From Vitrella brassicaformis CCMP3155 (taxonomy: Eukaryota; Protista; Chromerida), in NCBI GenBank assembly GCA_001179505.1, contig CDMY01000309.1, positions 63,479 to 127,478 on the forward strand: a DNA stretch of 64,000 nt, read 5' to 3'. The notes below the pieces were generated by a model. It saw nothing but the letters and a program-made list of their open reading frames with translations, ran no database searches and had not been told where the DNA came from. Shown one piece after another: positions 56,420 to 64,000 of this stretch (its first letter is position 1; every line of letters starts with the position of its first letter). The position numbers and the translations under genes are program-made.

Positions 56420-56530
56420 CACGGATGAATGGACCAACCAGATTCGCTACGCGTTCAGACGGGCGGGGAGAGAGGGCCGGGGCGATCGGGGGGCACATCA
56501 GGCGCGGCCGCCAGCCCCCCGTCAGTCGTC

Positions 56531-59500
56531 ATGTCGACGCCATCCACCATCACAGTTCGCCCTCCCGATGTCCGAGGGACTGCTCAACAGTTCAGTGCCG
56601 TCCAAGGATCATTCGAGCCGCCAGGTCAGCTCTTTATCATGCTTTCCGGAAGTGGATCTTGTTTGCCTCATTGCTCGTTGTTTGCTTCGACCAGATGTGC
56701 CTGCATCTACCTCAGGTGGGGCGCACGATTCATGTGAGGCCACATCGGACTCAGCCTCTTTCTCTCACTCTCTCCCCCTCAGGTGCACACACACCCGTCA
56801 CTCCCAACTTCTTCGAGCAGCCCGACGCAGAGGTCATTTCGAGAGCCATCGCCACGAGGTCACTACCGGTACTCAACCACGAGCAGCTGCATGACTCTCC
56901 CTTTGTTCGCAGGGTATCCTTCAACCGTCATGGGTTCGTCCATCAGAATGCCGGCAGCGTTTTTCATTACTATGATATCGACAAGGATGCGAAGCTGGGG
57001 TGATGGAACATACAGTTCACAGCATGAGACATGGCCATCCTTCTTTTTGTGTGTGGCAGATCGGGATCGTTTGGTGAGGTCTACATTGCTCGGTCTCGCT
57101 TCTCTGATGACCGGATAGCGATGAAGAAGATACCGCGGTCGATTGTCACCAATTTGGACAGATTCAACAAGGAAATGAGGATACTCAAAGTGAGCACGAG
57201 ATCCATCGCGCTGCCGTGAGGAAGGACCTGTCTGCGCCATGTCTCTGCTTCTTTCCAGGAGCTGGATCATCCCCACATCATTCGTCTGTTTGAGATCTTT
57301 TATGATGCGAGACACGTACGTAAGAATGATGTATGTCTCTGCATGTCTTTGTGTTTGGTCTCATTCGCACTCTGGTCTCTCCCACCGGCTGATTCGTCGC
57401 TTCTTTGCAGTATTATCTGTGTCAGGAGCTGTGTGAGGGCGGAGAGCTCCACTCATGGCTGCACAAAAGTAAGACAAAAAAGCCGAGTCCCATTCAGTCG
57501 ACACCTAATTCATCGATGGTGCAGGTGGCGGGTGTGTGAGTGAGGCCCAGTGGGGCCGGTTGCTGCCTCAATTCCTCTCAGCGATCACATACATGCACAC
57601 AAAAGGTCAGCACCATTCATCAAAGGCACATGGCCTGACGCCACTCCGCAACAGGGATTTGTCATCGGGATCTCAAGTTCGACAATGTGCTGTTCGTGGC
57701 ACCTGAACAAGACAATTTCATCATCAAAGTCAGTATTGGTCGCATAGAGATCACGAGACGCGTAGGAGAATAATCCCCTGTCTTCTTCAGCTGGTGGATT
57801 TCGGTTTTGCCAGTGAGTCTGTCGACCGGGATGAGGGAAGGAAACTGTCAGCCAAGAGCCGAGACCCGAGCATGCTCCAACTGGTACGCACACATGTAGC
57901 TCTCCCAAGCCCACTCGCTTTTCCGTTCGCTCGCTTGTCTTCGTTGTTGGGCATGCTAGATCACTCCGCTTACAAGCGGACCTGTGAGTCGCTATGCTGC
58001 CAAGCCCGATACACTGCCTCTACCCCTCAACTTCTACGCAAAGACGTCGGCGCAGCAGCATCAAGACGACACAACAGGCAATCTGAAGAGACTCATGCAA
58101 AGGTAAAGCGAGAGCGCCGCACAATCGATCGGCACTCGTTTGTGTGGGTCTGTCCAGTCGTGGTCGCGCCGTGACATTCGGCGAGGGGATTGAGTCGGAG
58201 CAGGATGAGGCGGACGCTAAGGAACAGGAGCAGGGTGGGCGGACTATAATGAACACAAGAGCAGAGTCATGGCTAGACAAAATGATGCACTGGCACTTAT
58301 ACAGAGGAGTACTTCGGTCGCTCCCAGCGCTTCCGTGCGTCGTTGCGCAGCCAGGCGCCCATCACGGGTGGAACATACACGGACATCGAACATCCGGCTC
58401 ACAGCTGCGCCGCCCCCGAGTACCAATTCACGATACAATTCACCGATCGCTGCGACATGTGGAGCCTCGTGAGCCGGCCAAGAAGCAAATGACTACAAGC
58501 GGAATGTAGGGGTGTGTGTTTGCAGGGAGTAATGACGTATGTCGCTCTCAGCGGTCACTATCCATGGGGAAAGGACTTTGATCAGTCGGAGGTCTCCAGG
58601 TAAATGAGTGAATGAGTGAGTGTGTGTGCGTGTCTGCTCATTGTCTCTGCTTTCAGTACGAAGATTCATTGGGATGACTTCCAGCTGACATTCGATGACG
58701 ACAAGTGGAGCAAGGTGTCCAAGGAGGCCAAAGACTTCATTCGAGTACATAGAAAGGCACAACACGACAAGAATTGCGCTTTGCTGGTTGCGGGTACGGT
58801 ACCCAATTGCCTCAGCGCCTCGTGCAAGTGGATCCCTCACAGCGTCTGTCTGCCCGCGACGCCCTGGACCACCCATACGTGAAGAAATACAAACCAAAAC
58901 ATGACATCAATGCGTATGTGATGCAGCCAACAAGAAATTGCTACTACTGTATGCCTGTCTCTTCAGCTTGACCGATGAGATCGTTGCCAGCATCCTGGAA
59001 TGGCCCTTTCACTCGCAGCTCAAGAAGGCGGCACTCACCGCCGCAGCCTGCTTCTTAAAGGAGCAAAAGCTGGAGGTGCCAGGAACAGCTTGGCGCCTGT
59101 CTGTCTCACAGCAGTGCCTTTCCTCTGCACCTGTTTATCTCTTGAGTGCAGAAACTCCGTTTGGCATTTCAATCAATCGATCTGGACAACGATGGCTTCA
59201 TCGAGTTCAAGGAGTTCGAAAAAGTCAGGCAATAAATCACCAAAACGAAAGCGTCACGTCGATCCATGCCAGCTCGCTTTCAGGTTTTCCGCAAGCGTCT
59301 CGACGCCCTGCTGGCTCTTCCTTCTCGCAAAGGCACCCTCGGAAACCACCTGGAGATATTCGCCGAGGACGTGCAGCAGAACAGCGAGGAGATGAAGGTG
59401 AGGCCACACAAACGCCTTCTTACTCGTGTATCAGTTCTGATTCCCAATCAGGTGATTTTCCACAGCATTGACACGAATGTGGCGTCGCACATCGAGTTTA

Positions 59501-62500
59501 AGGTCATCATGACCGAGACACAGTGCAATGTTTTCTCGTTAGCGTGCTGCTGCTGTCTTCCAGGAGTTTTCGGCCGCTGCAATGGGCAGCGACCTGGCCA
59601 CCAATGTCGAGCTGTGCAAGGCTGCTTTCAGGTGCTTCGACCAGGTAAGGAAGAAGGCGGCGGTGGCGACACGGAAAAGGCGTGTGTCTTTTGTCTCTGA
59701 CAAGGATGGCGACGGTGTGGTCAGCCTCGAAGAGCTGAAAGAAGTCACAGAGGGACCAAGACGGTACAACTCCCTTCACCCACGAAACCCGCTCACATTC
59801 GTCTTGTGTCTCATCTAATTCCAGCCGCATTCGCATCAACGCATCCTCCTCACCGTCCAGCCCGCACCACGAGCCGAGCTCACCAGCAGCAAAAAATGTC
59901 ATGTCACCCCTCAGCAGAACTAGAAGCTTCATGTCTGCCCCGGGGTCGCCTGAGGCGGAACAACAGCTCCCCTCGTTCCCACCAATGCATCGCGAAAAGC
60001 TTAATTTCATGCCTGCGGGACTGCGGTCGATCCAGAGACACATTGGACCGACCCTGCACGCGGAGACACTCGTCAAAATCGTGAGACCCGGGCAGGCATA
60101 GGTGGATTGCTGGTTGGTATTTTGTGTGGCTGTGCGTGTGCACGCGTACGTGAATGCAGGCTTTGGGAGATGATGATGACGAGCTTGAGTATGAGGATTT
60201 TGTCAATCTGATATCGGAGAAGGTCATGCTGCGGTGTTACTATGAGGTGGGGCACGGACGGGCCTCGTACCTCTTTGCACACGAAGGTAAGCAAACAAAT
60301 CGCACGAGCCGGCTGCATAGCCTCTATTACACTGTCAGGCAACGCTTATGTTTTAGACCCCGAATGGAACATCTGGCAATACGTCAGAGACCTTCAGGTC
60401 AGGCACACTAAGCGAGATGGGGCAATGAGCCTTCCACAGGAGATAAGCCTTATACGATCTCACTGGTTCTCTTCTCACGTTAGCATTTCAACCTGTCCCT
60501 GAAGGGCATTCTGCTGACACACATGCCCCTCGACAGTCTATCAGGTGCGTGAGTGATTCGGCAGCAACCCTTCCTGTGTGAATGACTATCCTCGTCCCTC
60601 TATTCAGGGCACTACGAGTTGAGCCACGTGACGGGCTGTCCAGTGTATTTCAGCAGAGAGGAGGAACTCCTCCAGGGAACGGCGCCACCAAAAAGGGAGA
60701 CTTGTGTCTCAAACAATGCCATATACAAGTGAGCAGCAGACGATACACGACAGGTCTCTGTTCAATGCAGGTGTCCCCTTCTTTCAGGATATCTAGTCGG
60801 TTTGTGTGGCGGGTTCTCGAGACGCCCGGCCACACACCGGGGGCACTCACGTGGCTGCTTTGCAGGAACAAGGGGAAGGAGGTAAGCAGAGGGGAGGAGG
60901 CATCACTTCTGTCATTCGTGTGCCTGTGCATGATAGGCCGGCACTCCATTAATCGGCTTCACGGGAGCCACTCTACTCAACGGAGCCGTCGGTCGCACTG
61001 ACGTCGGCGAATCGCTCCTCAACAAGTGGGCTTGAGACACACAGGGAGAAGCGCGGTAATGAACACTGTGCTTCTGCTCTCAGGCCTTCCAGCAAGAAGG
61101 GGAAGCGTAGCCTGGTTGAGAGCCTGTTTGAGTCCCTGCAGCAGCTCGATACTCTCTTGCCCGCGTCAATCGATATTTACCCCGCCTATGGCCCAGGCAG
61201 CCCCGTCGCCATACCCGAAAGCTTCTGCCTTGATCTCAGGACAACGGTGTGTGAGCACACGCACATACAGGTCCCGCGACCAAGCAGCCTCTCGCCTCGC
61301 GTGCTCCTTGTGTGTGCTTAGCTGGCAGAGCAGCGTCAGCAGAATGAGTTCTTCAGGGCAAAGAACAAGGAAGCCTTCACTGAGCTGATGGACAGGCTGC
61401 TAAAGCAGGAGATATCTGTCGGGCGTACACGACTCTGCTGGGATGAGGTGAACGCACAACAGACCACAGGAGAGGAACGGAGAGACACCTGTGGGCGGTG
61501 GCTGCTTTTCTCAGGTGGTTCGCGAGAACAGCATCAAGTGGGATGAGCGCAAGAAGATCCTCCCAGCGCCACCAGCCTCAATCGAGGAGTACCACCCAGC
61601 AGTTCTCACACAGCGTTTTGGCGGCGCCTTGCCCTTCAAGGCTTTTCTCCAAAGGCTGATCAGCCTTGAAAGCAAACATGGCCGGGACTCCCTGATCATC
61701 ATCGACGGCAGAGACTGCGACAAATTCGCACAGTAAGGGTTGCTTGTACGTCATCGCGTCGTTTTTTCCACAACAAGTGCCTGTATGTCGATGCCTTACT
61801 GGTTTCAGGTGCCATCTGCAAGGTTCTTTGAATGTCCCTGTGCACACCTCAAGTCCGGTCGAGGACTTTTGGGGCATCTGGATCGTCTCCATGATCAAGA
61901 CCCTCAACGCGCCGCCGCCCACACGGGACAGCAGCTCCCAGAAGGCACCCAAATCGGGCACGTCGTCTGCTCGCGGCAGTTCGACGCCATCTCCATCGCT
62001 GAGCAAGACGCCTTTTCCGTCTGTGAGCAACACGTCACTACCAAGTGATGGGGCGGGGGCCACGCGAGACAAGGAAAAGCTGTTGGTGGTCGCGCCGTCA
62101 GAGCAACTAGAGGAAATGCTCATGTGAGAAGACGATGGACAGGGTAGCATCACACCAATGGTGCGAACTCCTTCATGTCCGGCCTTTTGCAGGCGCCTGG
62201 CTCAGATGGGATTGGGGGATAGGATAGTCGCTGCCACGGGATGCGACCTGGAGATCGCCGCGGACAATAAAATGTACCCGCGAAGGTAGCCAAGACGCAG
62301 AGGCAAAGCTGTCGATTCACGATTCTCACTGCCCTTTGTTTAGTTCGTACGACTTGTTGGAGATTCCAACTGAGTCGACATTTTTCCCGTCAGGCAGCGA
62401 AGACGGGGACGATCAGGCGGACGGAGGAGGTATGGCACTACGACTTGGGTTGTGGTGGAAGCCTTGTCCACAGGAGTGGCGTGTCTGTGTGGCAGAGGCG

Positions 62501-62979
62501 CCATGGCTGTACCAGAAGGACATGCGTATTCTCGACGTCCGGACCCCACCCGAGTTCTTCCATCCAACCATCGGAAGAGTCAAGGGCAAGCCGGCGGATC
62601 GAATTGACTGACTGCTATCTGCTGGGAGCCTGTTTTGCTGTCTGGTTGCAGGTTCTGAGCTGATACCTCTCGATCAGCTCCCCTCTGTCGTCCACGGTCT
62701 TGACGCAGCTTTCAGGTGCTGTTGGTTCTCTGTGAGTATATGGTGTCTCCTCCCTGTTTGTCGATACAGGTATCTGCTTCTCTGCAAGTGCGGCTTCCGT
62801 TCTTCAATTGCTGCGTCTCTCCTACTGAGAAAGGGACTGAGGCCGATTCGCTTGCAGGGAGGGTAAGTAATCCAGCAACCCATCCCATGAGTGCCTGTTG
62901 TCACAAGCTCGTCCATTGCTGCAGACACGATCAGCTGCGCCGGCTGCGGCCTGACCTTTGCGTGTATGGGGCGCCATAG
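56531..62979 (+). CDS. Calcium-dependent protein kinase fused to a CstB-like metallo-beta-lactamase (degenerate)-pseudo-rhodanese-rhodanese module
   Basis: Kinase motifs LGSGSFGEV, AMKKI, HRDLKFDN, DFG, APE, DMWSLG; EF-hands DLDNDGFIEFKE and DQDGDGVVSLEE; exon 60160-60286 reads ...ELEYEDFVNLISEKVMLRCYYEVGHGRASYLFAHEG without a stop; then VLDP, THMPLDSLSGHYEL, TPGHTPG, FTGATLLNGAVGRTD, IYPAYGPGS, IIIDGR..HLQGSLNVP, ILDVRTPPEF, LCKCGFRSSIAASLL; stop at 62977-62979. Confidence 0.8.
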
Positions 62980-63376
62980 AGAGGGAGAAGGGAAGGGGCA
63001 CGTGGCCAAGGAGAGGGATTCTGTATGCGACAGCAGTTACTGTCCCCCCTTGTCTTTTTGTTCCTGGATGGCAGCACGTGCTGCCCTTTGCGTTTTTGTT
63101 GCGCTGTTGCTTTCCTTGGACTCCCTGGACTGCGTGTCATGCGCATACGTACATTTGCTGTTTTGTGCTGGACTGCTGATGCAATTTGCCGCGCAGCAAC
63201 TGTTGCGCTGGGCGGGGAATGGCTGGGCGAGGCATTCAGGAGCCTCTCCGCCTGGGGACGAGAATTGTTCATGGAGACATGCGACAGTGACGTGCGTCTG
63301 TGTTGGGCAATATCATTCCTCATGCATTTCTCAAAGGAAGAGAGAGAGTATACACAAGTGAAGGACCCATGGCAAT

Positions 63377-63649
63377 CCATTCATCTTGTCTCATCCCTTT
63401 CATTGTGTGTCCGCGTCTCTCCTTCGGAGAATCTGTACAGCGCTGTACTCTGTCGTGTCACCCAGCTGTCTCGTAGCGTCTGTCCGCTGGAGGCATATCC
63501 AGTCGCAGCCCCACGGCCAACGAGACCCATACGTCATGGCAGTCCATTCATTTTGTCTCACCCTTTCATTGTGTGTCAGCCTGTACTCTGTCGTGTCACC
63601 CAGCTGTCTCGTAGCGTCTGTCCGCCGGAGGCATATCCAGTCGAAGCCC
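63377..63649. repeat. Imperfect direct repeat (63377-63511 and 63544-63649)
   Basis: Both copies carry CTGTACTCTGTCGTGTCACCCAGCTGTCTCGTAGCGTCTGTCCGC.GGAGGCATATCCAGTCG.AGCCC; copy 1 has an extra ~28 nt internally. Confidence 0.85.
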
Positions 63650-64000
63650 GTCCCAAGCCTCTCACGCAACCGCTTGGTCACACTGCATGCGACAGCGTGA
63701 ATGAATCACACAATGGATTCGGGCTTGTGTCTTACTACACACCGTGATGTGGTAGCATTCTGTAGCGGTTTCACAGGTTTCAGCAGCGGCGCGACTGGCT
63801 GCCTCCGTATCGGTGGTTAGGGGGTAGCTCAGATCATTTCCGACAAAAGTAAAAAATAACCGCGCAGATGGTGTGATTCAATCGGGTGTAGTAACCGGGG
63901 GTCCACTCGCAAACGTCGAGAATCTCGACATGCAGGCCCCATTTCGCATGTGACCCCCATATAATGAAATTGCAGAGAAGCAGCCCACCCAGATTATGTG

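What the first reader, a model, noticed from the sequence alone, without database searches (positions are those of the whole stretch)
60484..62800. The fused MBL domain looks catalytically dead while the terminal rhodanese keeps its active-site Cys
Seen: the HxHxD metal motif reads THMPLD (second His replaced by Pro, 60517-60534), the bridging Asp of FTGD is Ala (FTGA, ~60958-60970), and the distal His of PxHG is Tyr (PAYG). The first His, the Asp and the TPGHT His remain. Rhodanese 1 has no evident Cys loop. Rhodanese 2 has L-C-K-C-G-F-R (Cys at 62783-62785, second Cys at 62789-62791). Known: MBL persulfide dioxygenases need these His/Asp iron ligands, and CxxGxR is the rhodanese catalytic loop. 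Inference: a pseudo-dioxygenase used as a scaffold or sensor, plus a live sulfurtransferase; the neighbouring Cys could form a redox switch.
Basis: partly seen in the sequence, partly recalled or inferred. Interest (0 to 1): 0.72.

Follow-up and report, generated by a model that had tools for sequence, protein, structure and literature searches.

The report
Dead dioxygenase, intact rhodanese on kinase
In the alga Vitrella brassicaformis, a calcium-dependent protein kinase carries at its tail a bacterial-type sulfur-detoxifying module whose iron-dependent oxygenase part has lost key catalytic residues while its sulfur-carrying end domain is fully conserved; this points to a new link between calcium and reactive-sulfur signalling, but it has not been tested.

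Summary
The stretch is the 3' half of one spliced, transcribed gene of Vitrella brassicaformis CCMP3155. The public record is CEM01770.1 / A0A0G4EU28, 1343 aa, unnamed. Its order is kinase, EF-hands, then a CstB-like three-domain module: MBL/persulfide-dioxygenase (PDO), Cys-less pseudorhodanese, and rhodanese.

I aligned it with S. aureus CstB (PDB 3R2U, E 5e-17) and about 100 bacterial homologues.
- **PDO domain, kept:** two of the three Fe(II) ligands (H801, H864).
- **PDO domain, lost:** the third ligand (CstB D145 is A891 here), two near-invariant His (P803, Y945), and the CstB C201-G202 substrate loop (V951-A952 here).
- **C-terminal rhodanese:** it keeps 11 of 11 near-invariant family residues, including the C-x-x-G-x-R loop. 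The PDO domain keeps only 31 of 48 (Fisher p = 0.015 one-sided, 0.024 two-sided).
- **Cys-less first rhodanese:** this is ancestral to the CstB family, not a local decay.

Splicing and letters agree between the genome, a JGI transcript and contigs from three studies. Pfam misses the MBL domain. No other kinase fusion of this module turned up in three searches.

Function is inferred: a PDO-dead scaffold with a persulfide-competent rhodanese. The Cys-x-Cys redox switch is speculation. The scan holds three first-reader notes on this same stretch and none on other DNA.

The parts
56429..58913 (+). N-terminal region and protein kinase domain. G-loop GSGSFG, the Lys of A-M-K-K, HRD, DFG and APE are all present. 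There is an insert in the activation loop.
   Evidence: Pfam Pkinase E 2.8e-44 on P0107. Exons 57791-58913 are confirmed by transcript L001. Exons upstream of 57705 are inferred from the reading frame and splice sites and from P0107.
58967..60219 (+). Junction region and EF-hand (calmodulin-like) domain. A low-complexity insert of about 100 aa (59825-60080) separates EF3 from EF4. The exiting helix of EF4 runs straight into the MBL domain.
   Evidence: Pfam EF-hand_7, EF-hand_1, EF-hand_5 and EF-hand_6. Exons are confirmed.
60220..61447 (+). Degenerate MBL-fold persulfide-dioxygenase domain (P0107 747-1006). Exons: 60160-60286, 60339-60397, 60484-60544, 60608-60728, 60788-60881, 60937-61025, 61084-61246, 61322-61447.
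   Evidence: phmmer to CstB 3R2U at 5.4e-17. Family HMM at 2.5e-41. AF2 pLDDT is 85-97 in this part. Foldseek hits 3TP9, 3R2U and ETHE1. Pfam Lactamase_B gives only 12.8 bits against a cut-off of 22.7.
60520..60537 (+). Motif H-M-P-L-D-S, where the family has H-x-H-x-D-F/Y. H801 is kept (it matches CstB Fe ligand H56). The second His is Pro803. D805 is kept.
60831..60833 (+). H864 of T-P-G-H-T, kept. It matches CstB Fe ligand H119.
60967..60969 (+). A891 in F-T-G-A, at the position of CstB Fe ligand D145.
61187..61210 (+). Y945 replaces the His of P-x-H-G. V951-A952 replace the Cys-Gly (CstB C201-G202) of the mobile substrate loop.
   Evidence: PMC12934615
61515..62429 (+). Middle pseudorhodanese homology domain with no active-site Cys, as in the whole CstB family. 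It holds a disordered Ser/Thr/Pro-rich insert of about 55 aa. Exons: 61515-61732, 61809-62123, 62193-62285, 62344-62429.
   Evidence: Pfam Rhodanese is weak, E 0.0099. The family column has no Cys. AF2 pLDDT is under 50 in the insert.
62496..62979 (+). C-terminal rhodanese domain through the stop codon (62977-62979). Exons: 62496-62585, 62652-62715, 62770-62862, 62925-62979. Intron 62586-62651 is GC..AG.
   Evidence: Pfam Rhodanese 27-39 bits against a cut-off of 22.2. 11 of 11 near-invariant family residues are kept.
62783..62800 (+). Active-site loop C1300-K-C1302-G-F-R1305, a six-residue loop of the sulfurtransferase type. C1300 matches CstB C408 and R1305 matches CstB R413. C1302 is unique to this protein.

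Best explanation
The stretch encodes the C-terminal 600 residues of a Vitrella brassicaformis calcium-dependent protein kinase. This part is a module of bacterial CstB type: persulfide dioxygenase, then pseudorhodanese, then rhodanese.

The dioxygenase domain keeps its fold but can no longer carry out the CstB/ETHE1 reaction. It lacks one of the three Fe(II) ligands (Asp to Ala), two near-invariant active-site His (to Pro and Tyr), and the Cys-Gly loop that CstB oxidises.

The terminal rhodanese keeps every near-invariant residue. It most likely still accepts a sulfane sulfur on C1300 as a persulfide.

The inferred role is as follows. The dead dioxygenase and the pseudorhodanese serve as the structural platform, and possibly the oligomerisation platform, for a live sulfur-accepting domain. 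That domain either senses persulfide or thiosulfate for the kinase, or transfers sulfur under calcium and kinase control.

Shown: gene structure, transcription, homology, which residues are kept and which are lost, and differential conservation. Inferred: loss of Fe binding and activity, rhodanese competence, and any coupling to the kinase.
For: - **One spliced mRNA with one open frame.** Joints and a 5296-nt contig. Exon sums match. An independent transcript, L001, confirms every intron. The public protein P0107 is identical over residues 339-1343.
- **Family assignment.** CstB 3R2U at 5.4e-17 and 3TP9 at 2.3e-12 by sequence. Foldseek gives 3TP9 at 1e-32, then 3R2U, 5VE3 and the ETHE1 structures. 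The AF2 model has mean pLDDT 77, with the MBL part at 85-97.
- **Roles of the residues in CstB.** Fe ligands are H56, H119 and D145. C201-G202 is the self-sulfonated loop. C201A and C408A are both inactive. R370 and R413 steer the substrate (PMC12934615).
- **Column counts.** Second His: H in 96 of 99, Pro here. His of P-x-H-G: H in 102 of 103, Tyr here. Asp: D in 86 and G in 17, Ala here. Rhodanese Cys in 102 of 103, G in 101 and R in 103 of 103, all kept here. Loop Cys present in all 72 aligned homologues, Val here.
- **Differential retention of columns at least 90% conserved.** PDO 31 of 48, pseudorhodanese 6 of 10, rhodanese 11 of 11, one-sided Fisher p 0.015. With 98 homologues the counts are 34 of 52, 7 of 12 and 11 of 11.
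Against: - There are no biochemical data.
- Two triad ligands (H801, H864) and the Asp of H-x-H-x-D (D805) survive, so an altered metal site cannot be excluded.
- A bacterial subfamily lives with Gly at the Asp position, so that single loss is not proof of death.
- The protein sits on a very long branch (3.79 changes per column). No orthologue exists against which to measure selection, so slow decay of the whole module is not ruled out.
- 11 of 11 against 31 of 48 is significant only at about 0.02.
- Nothing links the module functionally to the kinase beyond the fusion itself.
Confidence: 0.6

Rival explanations
1. The whole CstB-like module is non-catalytic. It serves only as a folded docking, oligomerisation or localisation domain of the kinase, or it is decaying. 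The rhodanese Cys loop is retained without being used for sulfur chemistry.
For: - The branch is very long.
- 17 of 48 conserved PDO positions and 4 of 10 pseudorhodanese positions are lost.
- In CstB the PDO and rhodanese sites are tightly coupled and each is useless without the other, so loss of one could free the other from selection.
- No orthologue is available to show constraint.
Against: - All 11 near-invariant rhodanese residues, including C, G and R of the loop and the D-V-R motif, are kept, while a third of the PDO ones are lost.
- The frame stays open over 15 exons with intact splice sites, and the gene is transcribed.
Confidence: 0.22
2. The MBL domain is still a metalloenzyme or a metal sensor. 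It uses a changed ligand set (H801, D805, H864, with or without another residue) and has a new substrate or a sensing role, rather than being dead.
For: - H801, D805 and H864 are kept, as are the T-P-G-H and G-R-x-D motifs, which are invariant in the family.
- A natural bacterial clade lacks the Asp ligand but keeps the rest.
- The fold is predicted with high confidence.
Against: - In that bacterial clade the second His, the P-x-H-G His and the loop Cys are all kept. Here all three are gone as well.
- The E of T-P-G-H-T-P-E and the R-D of D-P-x-R-D are also lost.
Confidence: 0.12
3. The fusion or the odd residues are artefacts. Possible causes would be two neighbouring genes merged by annotation, wrong splice sites, or sequencing errors.
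For: JGI gene calling on transcript L001 splits it into two genes at 1662/1743.
Against: - That split is caused by a 10-N scaffolding gap with a 4-base duplication in L001.
- The exon lengths implied by the 5296-nt Logan contig give a continuous frame.
- The motifs lie inside exons and are identical in the genome, the JGI transcript and contigs from three studies, with no variant letters.
Confidence: 0.03

Closest known systems
Staphylococcus aureus CstB (PDB 3R2U; multidomain persulfide dioxygenase-sulfurtransferase)
   Same: - Same three-domain order: ETHE1-like PDO, Cys-less pseudorhodanese, C-terminal rhodanese.
- Best sequence match in PDB, at 5.4e-17.
- Fe ligands H56 and H119, the G-R-x-D motif, and the rhodanese C408/R413 loop all have counterparts here.
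   Different: - Fe ligand D145 is Ala here.
- The second His of H-x-H is Pro.
- The P-G-H-G His is Tyr.
- The C201-G202 shuttle loop is Val-Ala.
- There is a Ser/Thr/Pro-rich insert of about 55 aa in the middle domain and an extra Cys in the rhodanese loop.
- The module is the tail of a eukaryotic kinase, not a free bacterial enzyme in a cst operon.
Alicyclobacillus acidocaldarius MBL + rhodanese protein (PDB 3TP9)
   Same: It is the best structural match over all three domains (Foldseek E 1e-32, TM by target 0.73). The sequence match is 2.3e-12.
   Different: 3TP9 keeps H-x-H-x-D, G-D and P-A-H-G (alignment). It is a stand-alone bacterial protein.
Two-domain PDO-rhodanese fusion BpPRF (PDB 5VE3) and single-domain PDOs ETHE1 (4CHL, 2GCU, 4YSB)
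   Same: Same MBL fold of the PDO type (Foldseek E 1e-15 to 1e-18, TM by target 0.76-0.82 for the ETHE1 structures).
   Different: They have no middle pseudorhodanese and a complete metal site. Sequence similarity is weak (4CHL E 0.085).
Calcium-dependent protein kinases (CDPKs) of apicomplexans, chromerids and plants
   Same: The N-terminal 745 residues are a kinase domain followed by EF-hands.
   Different: - I found no described CDPK with a C-terminal MBL/rhodanese module (paper searches).
- No such protein turned up among the long relatives.
- EF3 and EF4 are split by a 100-aa low-complexity insert.
Other fusions of the same module: bacterial-type sulfite-oxidase + MBL + rhodanese (P0115, P0116) and transporter (OATP/MFS) + MBL + rhodanese (P0117)
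   Same: The module is used as a fusion partner elsewhere, which shows that it is portable.
   Different: The partners there are sulfur-metabolic or transport domains, not signalling kinases. I did not check the state of their metal sites.

Membership tests
CstB-like three-domain PDO-rhodanese fusion proteins | Domain order: MBL/PDO, then Cys-less pseudorhodanese, then rhodanese with Cys | tested here: met
   Alignment to 3R2U and 3TP9. Family columns. Foldseek over all three domains. Architecture as described in PMC12934615.
CstB-like three-domain PDO-rhodanese fusion proteins | Fe(II) 2-His-1-carboxylate facial triad (CstB H56, H119, D145) | tested here: not met
   H801 and H864 are present. 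The Asp position is A891.
CstB-like three-domain PDO-rhodanese fusion proteins | Cys-Gly of the mobile loop (CstB C201-G202), the site of self-S-sulfonation | tested here: not met
   V951-A952 here. Cys is present in all 72 aligned homologues.
CstB-like three-domain PDO-rhodanese fusion proteins | Rhodanese catalytic Cys (C408) with the loop Arg (R413) and a second steering Arg (R370) | tested here: inconclusive
   C1300 and R1305 align with C408 and R413. The Arg of the conserved D-V-R motif is kept, but I did not map it to R370 residue by residue.
CstB-like three-domain PDO-rhodanese fusion proteins | O2-dependent conversion of thiol persulfides to thiosulfate | not testable with these tools
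   This needs purified protein.
Metallo-beta-lactamase superfamily (Pfam PF00753) | Profile match above the curated cut-off | tested here: not met
   12.8 bits against a cut-off of 22.7. No hit on P0107:745-1010.
Metallo-beta-lactamase superfamily (Pfam PF00753) | MBL alpha-beta/beta-alpha fold | tested here: met
   AF2 model with pLDDT 85-97 in the domain. Foldseek matches to PDO and glyoxalase II structures, with TM by target up to 0.82.
Rhodanese (Pfam PF00581), sulfurtransferase type | Profile match above the cut-off, and a six-residue C-x4-R loop (not the seven-residue Cdc25 type) | tested here: met
   36-39 bits against a cut-off of 22.2. The loop is C-K-C-G-F-R.
Calcium-dependent protein kinase | Ser/Thr kinase domain followed by EF-hand calmodulin-like domain in one chain | tested here: met
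   Pkinase at 2.8e-44 and EF-hand families at 1e-11 to 1e-14. Calcium dependence itself was not tested.

The most novel reading that the evidence does not exclude
The kinase uses a persulfide-accepting rhodanese, mounted on a dead dioxygenase platform, as a built-in sensor of sulfane sulfur (persulfide, polysulfide or thiosulfate). Persulfidation of C1300 would change kinase activity or substrate choice; this might be resolved as a C1300-C1302 di- or trisulfide. Calcium and reactive-sulfur signals would then be integrated in one protein, which would be a signalling principle not described for any kinase.
Probability: 0.2. Interest if true: 0.8.

Novelty: new variant of a known kind. Interest (0 to 1): 0.58.

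Why it matters
Persulfide and H2S signalling is an active field, but direct protein sensors that feed into phosphorylation cascades are few. A kinase carrying a CstB-type module, with the oxygenase switched off and the sulfur-accepting site preserved, would be a natural and testable candidate for such a sensor.

It also gives a clean example of a pseudoenzyme domain retained beside a live partner domain. It shows that a bacterial sulfur-detoxification module entered a eukaryotic signalling protein in the lineage closest to apicomplexan parasites.

There is a practical point too. The MBL domain is invisible to Pfam, so the public record, which names the protein only as an unnamed kinase, hides the architecture.

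Tried and rejected
- **Pfam on single exons** gave nothing. The exons are too short.
- **The 1.84-billion-protein representative search** with the 72-aa exon 61515-61730 found only the gene's own product plus two spurious repeat proteins. It served to obtain a protein id, not relatives.
- **A metagenome-contig scan** with the 587-aa module found no relative. It did not even find the gene's own transcript, so that blank says little.
- **The tree of 100 homologues** could not place the query. It has a 3.79 end branch and falls in a starred set that mixes both subfamilies. HMM scores favour the Asp-bearing group (183 against 148 bits), but the groups differ in size. I therefore make no claim about the donor lineage.
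- **The idea that the Asp loss was inherited from the bacterial 'Gly' subfamily** was considered because of the shared G-A-V-G-R-T-D stretch. It is left open.
- **The two-gene reading of transcript L001** was rejected once the N-run was seen.
- **dN/dS could not be computed.** There is no orthologue and no polymorphism in four runs.
- **The exons upstream of 57705** rest on reading frame, splice sites and kinase motifs only.
- **No spliced sequence was typed into any tool.** Spliced references were obtained through L001 and P0107.
Full report
**What the stretch is**

The window is eukaryotic, with 55-60% G+C. No frame in this region is open for long, which points to many short exons. I laid the contigs of four public runs on 58001-64000 and obtained 29 joints. 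Fifteen were listed; they skip 54-86 nt, and all are GT..AG except one GC..AG at 62586-62651. One 5296-nt spliced contig (X6 record 15) runs from about 1.8 kb of spliced sequence upstream of 58304 to 63472.

The unlisted joints were recovered from the contig's own coordinates. Between 59825 and 61084 exactly 807 exonic bases are required. Only the pair of solutions 186 + 183 nt keeps the frame open and respects a 53-nt uninterrupted piece seen in run X7. Between 58469 and 59223 a single chain satisfies the length, the frame and the expected kinase and EF-hand motifs.

The resulting frame is open for 1005 codons from 58305 to a stop at 62977-62979.

**Independent confirmation and identity**

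A search of 1.84 billion representatives with one 72-aa exon returned a 542-aa protein, P0001, that is 99% identical. Its encoding contig, L001, is a 3773-nt JGI transcript that matches the window exon by exon and confirms every intron from 57729 to 62924.

The JGI gene calls split L001 in two. That split is caused by a 10-N scaffolding gap with a 4-base duplication.

The 90% cluster of P0001 also holds P0107. This is CEM01770.1 / UniRef100_A0A0G4EU28, 'unnamed protein product [Vitrella brassicaformis CCMP3155]', 1343 aa. Its residues 339-1343 are identical to my model. The gene model is therefore public but uncharacterised. Earlier notes of this scan had named Vitrella, and verifies it.

**Architecture**

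Pfam finds Pkinase (2.8e-44), several EF-hand families and one rhodanese (36 bits) on P0107, but no MBL domain. The MBL part alone reaches 12.8 bits against a cut-off of 22.7.

Other evidence shows what Pfam misses:
- phmmer against PDB aligns residues 749-980 to S. aureus CstB (3R2U, 5.4e-17) and to the A. acidocaldarius MBL + rhodanese protein (3TP9, 2.3e-12).
- About 100 bacterial proteins of roughly 465 aa with MBL + rhodanese are 26-33% identical.
- An AlphaFold2 model built on 72 of them has mean pLDDT 77, with 85-97 in the MBL part.
- The model's best structural matches are 3TP9 (E 1e-32, all three domains), 3R2U, the BpPRF fusion 5VE3 and the ETHE1-type PDOs.

CstB is described as PDO, middle pseudorhodanese, then C-terminal rhodanese (PMC12934615). 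The tail of the Vitrella kinase is this same three-domain module. It is joined directly to the last EF-hand helix.

**The metal site**

In CstB the Fe(II) facial triad is H56, H119 and D145. C201-G202 in a mobile loop acts as a glutathione mimic that is persulfidated, S-sulfonated at the iron and carried to C408 of the rhodanese. C201A and C408A are both inactive, and R370 and R413 steer the loop.

I counted the 3R2U chain with its 24-residue tag offset against the alignment. The table shows how the CstB positions map to this protein and how conserved each is among the homologues.

| CstB position | Here | Family conservation |
|---|---|---|
| H56 | H801, kept | H in 99 of 99 |
| H119 | H864, kept | H in 103 of 103 |
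| D145 | A891, lost | D in 86 and G in 17 of 103 |
| second His of H-x-H | P803, lost | H in 96 of 99 |
| His of P-x-H-G | Y945, lost | H in 102 of 103 |
| loop Cys C201 | V951, lost | Cys in all 72 aligned homologues |

Further near-invariant PDO residues are also gone. These include the E of T-P-G-H-T-P-E and the R-D of D-P-x-R-D.

The 17 homologues with Gly form one clade (SH-aLRT 99). They keep both His and the Cys. Loss of the Asp alone is therefore not proof of inactivity. The combination seen here has no counterpart among the homologues examined.

**The rhodaneses**

The middle domain has no Cys at the loop position in any family member.

The C-terminal loop reads C-K-C-G-F-R-S against a family consensus of C-K-S/G-G-Y-R-S. 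C is present in 102 of 103, G in 101 of 103 and R in 103 of 103. With four residues between Cys and Arg it is the sulfurtransferase-type loop, not the longer Cdc25 type. The second Cys occurs in none of the 103 homologues.

**Differential conservation**

I took the columns that are at least 90% conserved among the 72 aligned homologues and counted how many the Vitrella protein keeps.

| Domain | Kept (72 homologues) | Kept (98 homologues) |
|---|---|---|
| PDO | 31 of 48 | 34 of 52 |
| Pseudorhodanese | 6 of 10 | 7 of 12 |
| Rhodanese | 11 of 11 | 11 of 11 |

PDO against rhodanese gives Fisher p = 0.015 one-sided and 0.024 two-sided. This is the main argument that the rhodanese site is still under selection while the oxygenase site is not. 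The evidence is modest. There is no orthologue for a proper rate test, and the protein sits on a very long branch (3.79).

**Artefact checks**

The motifs lie inside exons. The genome, the JGI transcript (P0001, L001) and contigs from three studies agree. No variant letters were reported inside the gene (table 3). The refutation condition 'correct splicing or resequencing restores the motifs' is not met.

**Distribution**

- Among proteins of 739-2350 aa, the module (region 745-1343) found only two sulfite-oxidase + MBL + rhodanese fusions.
- A repeat restricted to 745-1105, which avoids the low-complexity insert and in which all 3248 candidates were scored, found only a transporter + MBL + rhodanese fusion.
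- The exon search without a length filter found only the gene itself.
- The ESM Atlas neighbours are all bacterial or archaeal MBL + rhodanese clusters.
- Paper searches for a CDPK with a rhodanese or MBL domain, for the accession numbers, and for Vitrella CDPKs gave nothing relevant.

Within the sensitivity of these word-based searches, the kinase fusion is so far unique to this species. The module's relatives are prokaryotic, but the tree does not resolve a donor.

**Mechanism**

Shown:
- one transcribed gene with this architecture;
- homology to CstB;
- which catalytic residues are present and which are absent;
- stronger retention in the rhodanese.

Inferred from the CstB mechanism:
- without the Asp ligand, the second-sphere His residues and the Cys-Gly loop, the domain cannot perform Fe/O2-dependent S-sulfonation;
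- with C1300, R1305 and the D-V-R Arg intact, the rhodanese can probably still carry a persulfide.

Speculative:
- the module reports sulfane-sulfur status to the kinase, or is controlled by it;
- the Ser/Thr/Pro-rich insert is a phosphorylation site;
- C1302 resolves a C1300 persulfide.

I put 0.6 on 'dead PDO plus competent rhodanese', 0.22 on 'the whole module is non-catalytic', 0.12 on 'an altered but live metal site' and 0.03 on an artefact.

**Verdict**

The gene is a new variant of a known kind: a CstB-type module with its oxygenase disabled, recruited as the tail of a calcium-dependent kinase. It is a worthwhile experimental target but not a demonstrated new mechanism.

Noticed in passing
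window 57469-57654: The public protein model (P0107) jumps from '...HSWLHK' to 'ICHRD', which implies one 186-nt intron. An in-frame 81-nt exon at 57525-57605, flanked by introns 57469-57524 and 57606-57654, would supply the normal helix before the HRD motif. It would also bring the spacing to about 35 residues, as in other kinases. The public model probably skips this exon, but no read evidence was available here.
   Followed up: partly
L001:1595-1604 (window about 60255): The JGI transcript contig carries a 10-N scaffolding gap with a duplicated TGGG. This shifts the frame and made the JGI gene caller split one gene into a 553-aa and a 542-aa product. The 542-aa product starts at the Met inside T-H-M-P-L-D.
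   Followed up: yes
homologues P0071, P0078, P0082-P0086, P0088, P0089, P0092-P0094, P0100, P0101, P0105: This is a well-supported bacterial clade of MBL + rhodanese proteins (names point to Acidimicrobiales and Chloroflexi). It has Gly in place of the Fe-ligand Asp (F-T-G-G-S-L-L) and H-x-H-N-D-Y. It keeps both His, the P-T-H-G His and the loop Cys. How these proteins bind metal is unclear.
   Followed up: partly
P0115, P0116, P0117: The same MBL + rhodanese module occurs fused to a sulfite-oxidase-type molybdenum domain (852 and 862 aa) and to an OATP/MFS transporter (933 aa). I did not check their organisms or the state of their metal sites.
   Followed up: no
window 62586-62651: This is a GC..AG intron among otherwise GT..AG introns. 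The joint is seen in three runs.
   Followed up: yes
window 59825-60080 and 61890-62070: There are two disordered low-complexity inserts. One, of about 85-100 aa and rich in Ser/Pro, lies between EF-hand 3 and EF-hand 4. The other, of about 55 aa and rich in Ser/Thr/Pro, lies inside the pseudorhodanese (AF2 pLDDT under 50). Either could be a phosphorylation target of the kinase itself.
   Followed up: no
window 57884-58304: The kinase activation segment between DFG and APE carries a long insert of more than 100 residues, spread over three exons (57791-57883, 57959-58102, 58158-58234). The exons are confirmed by transcript L001.
   Followed up: partly
window 63386-63700: In the 3' UTR region just past the gene there are two near-identical direct copies of a segment of about 30 codons; it reads '...LYSVVSPSCLVASVR.RHIQS..' in one frame. 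In this region run X5 shows very high contig depth and variant letters near 63836-63893, which suggests a dispersed repeat.
   Followed up: no
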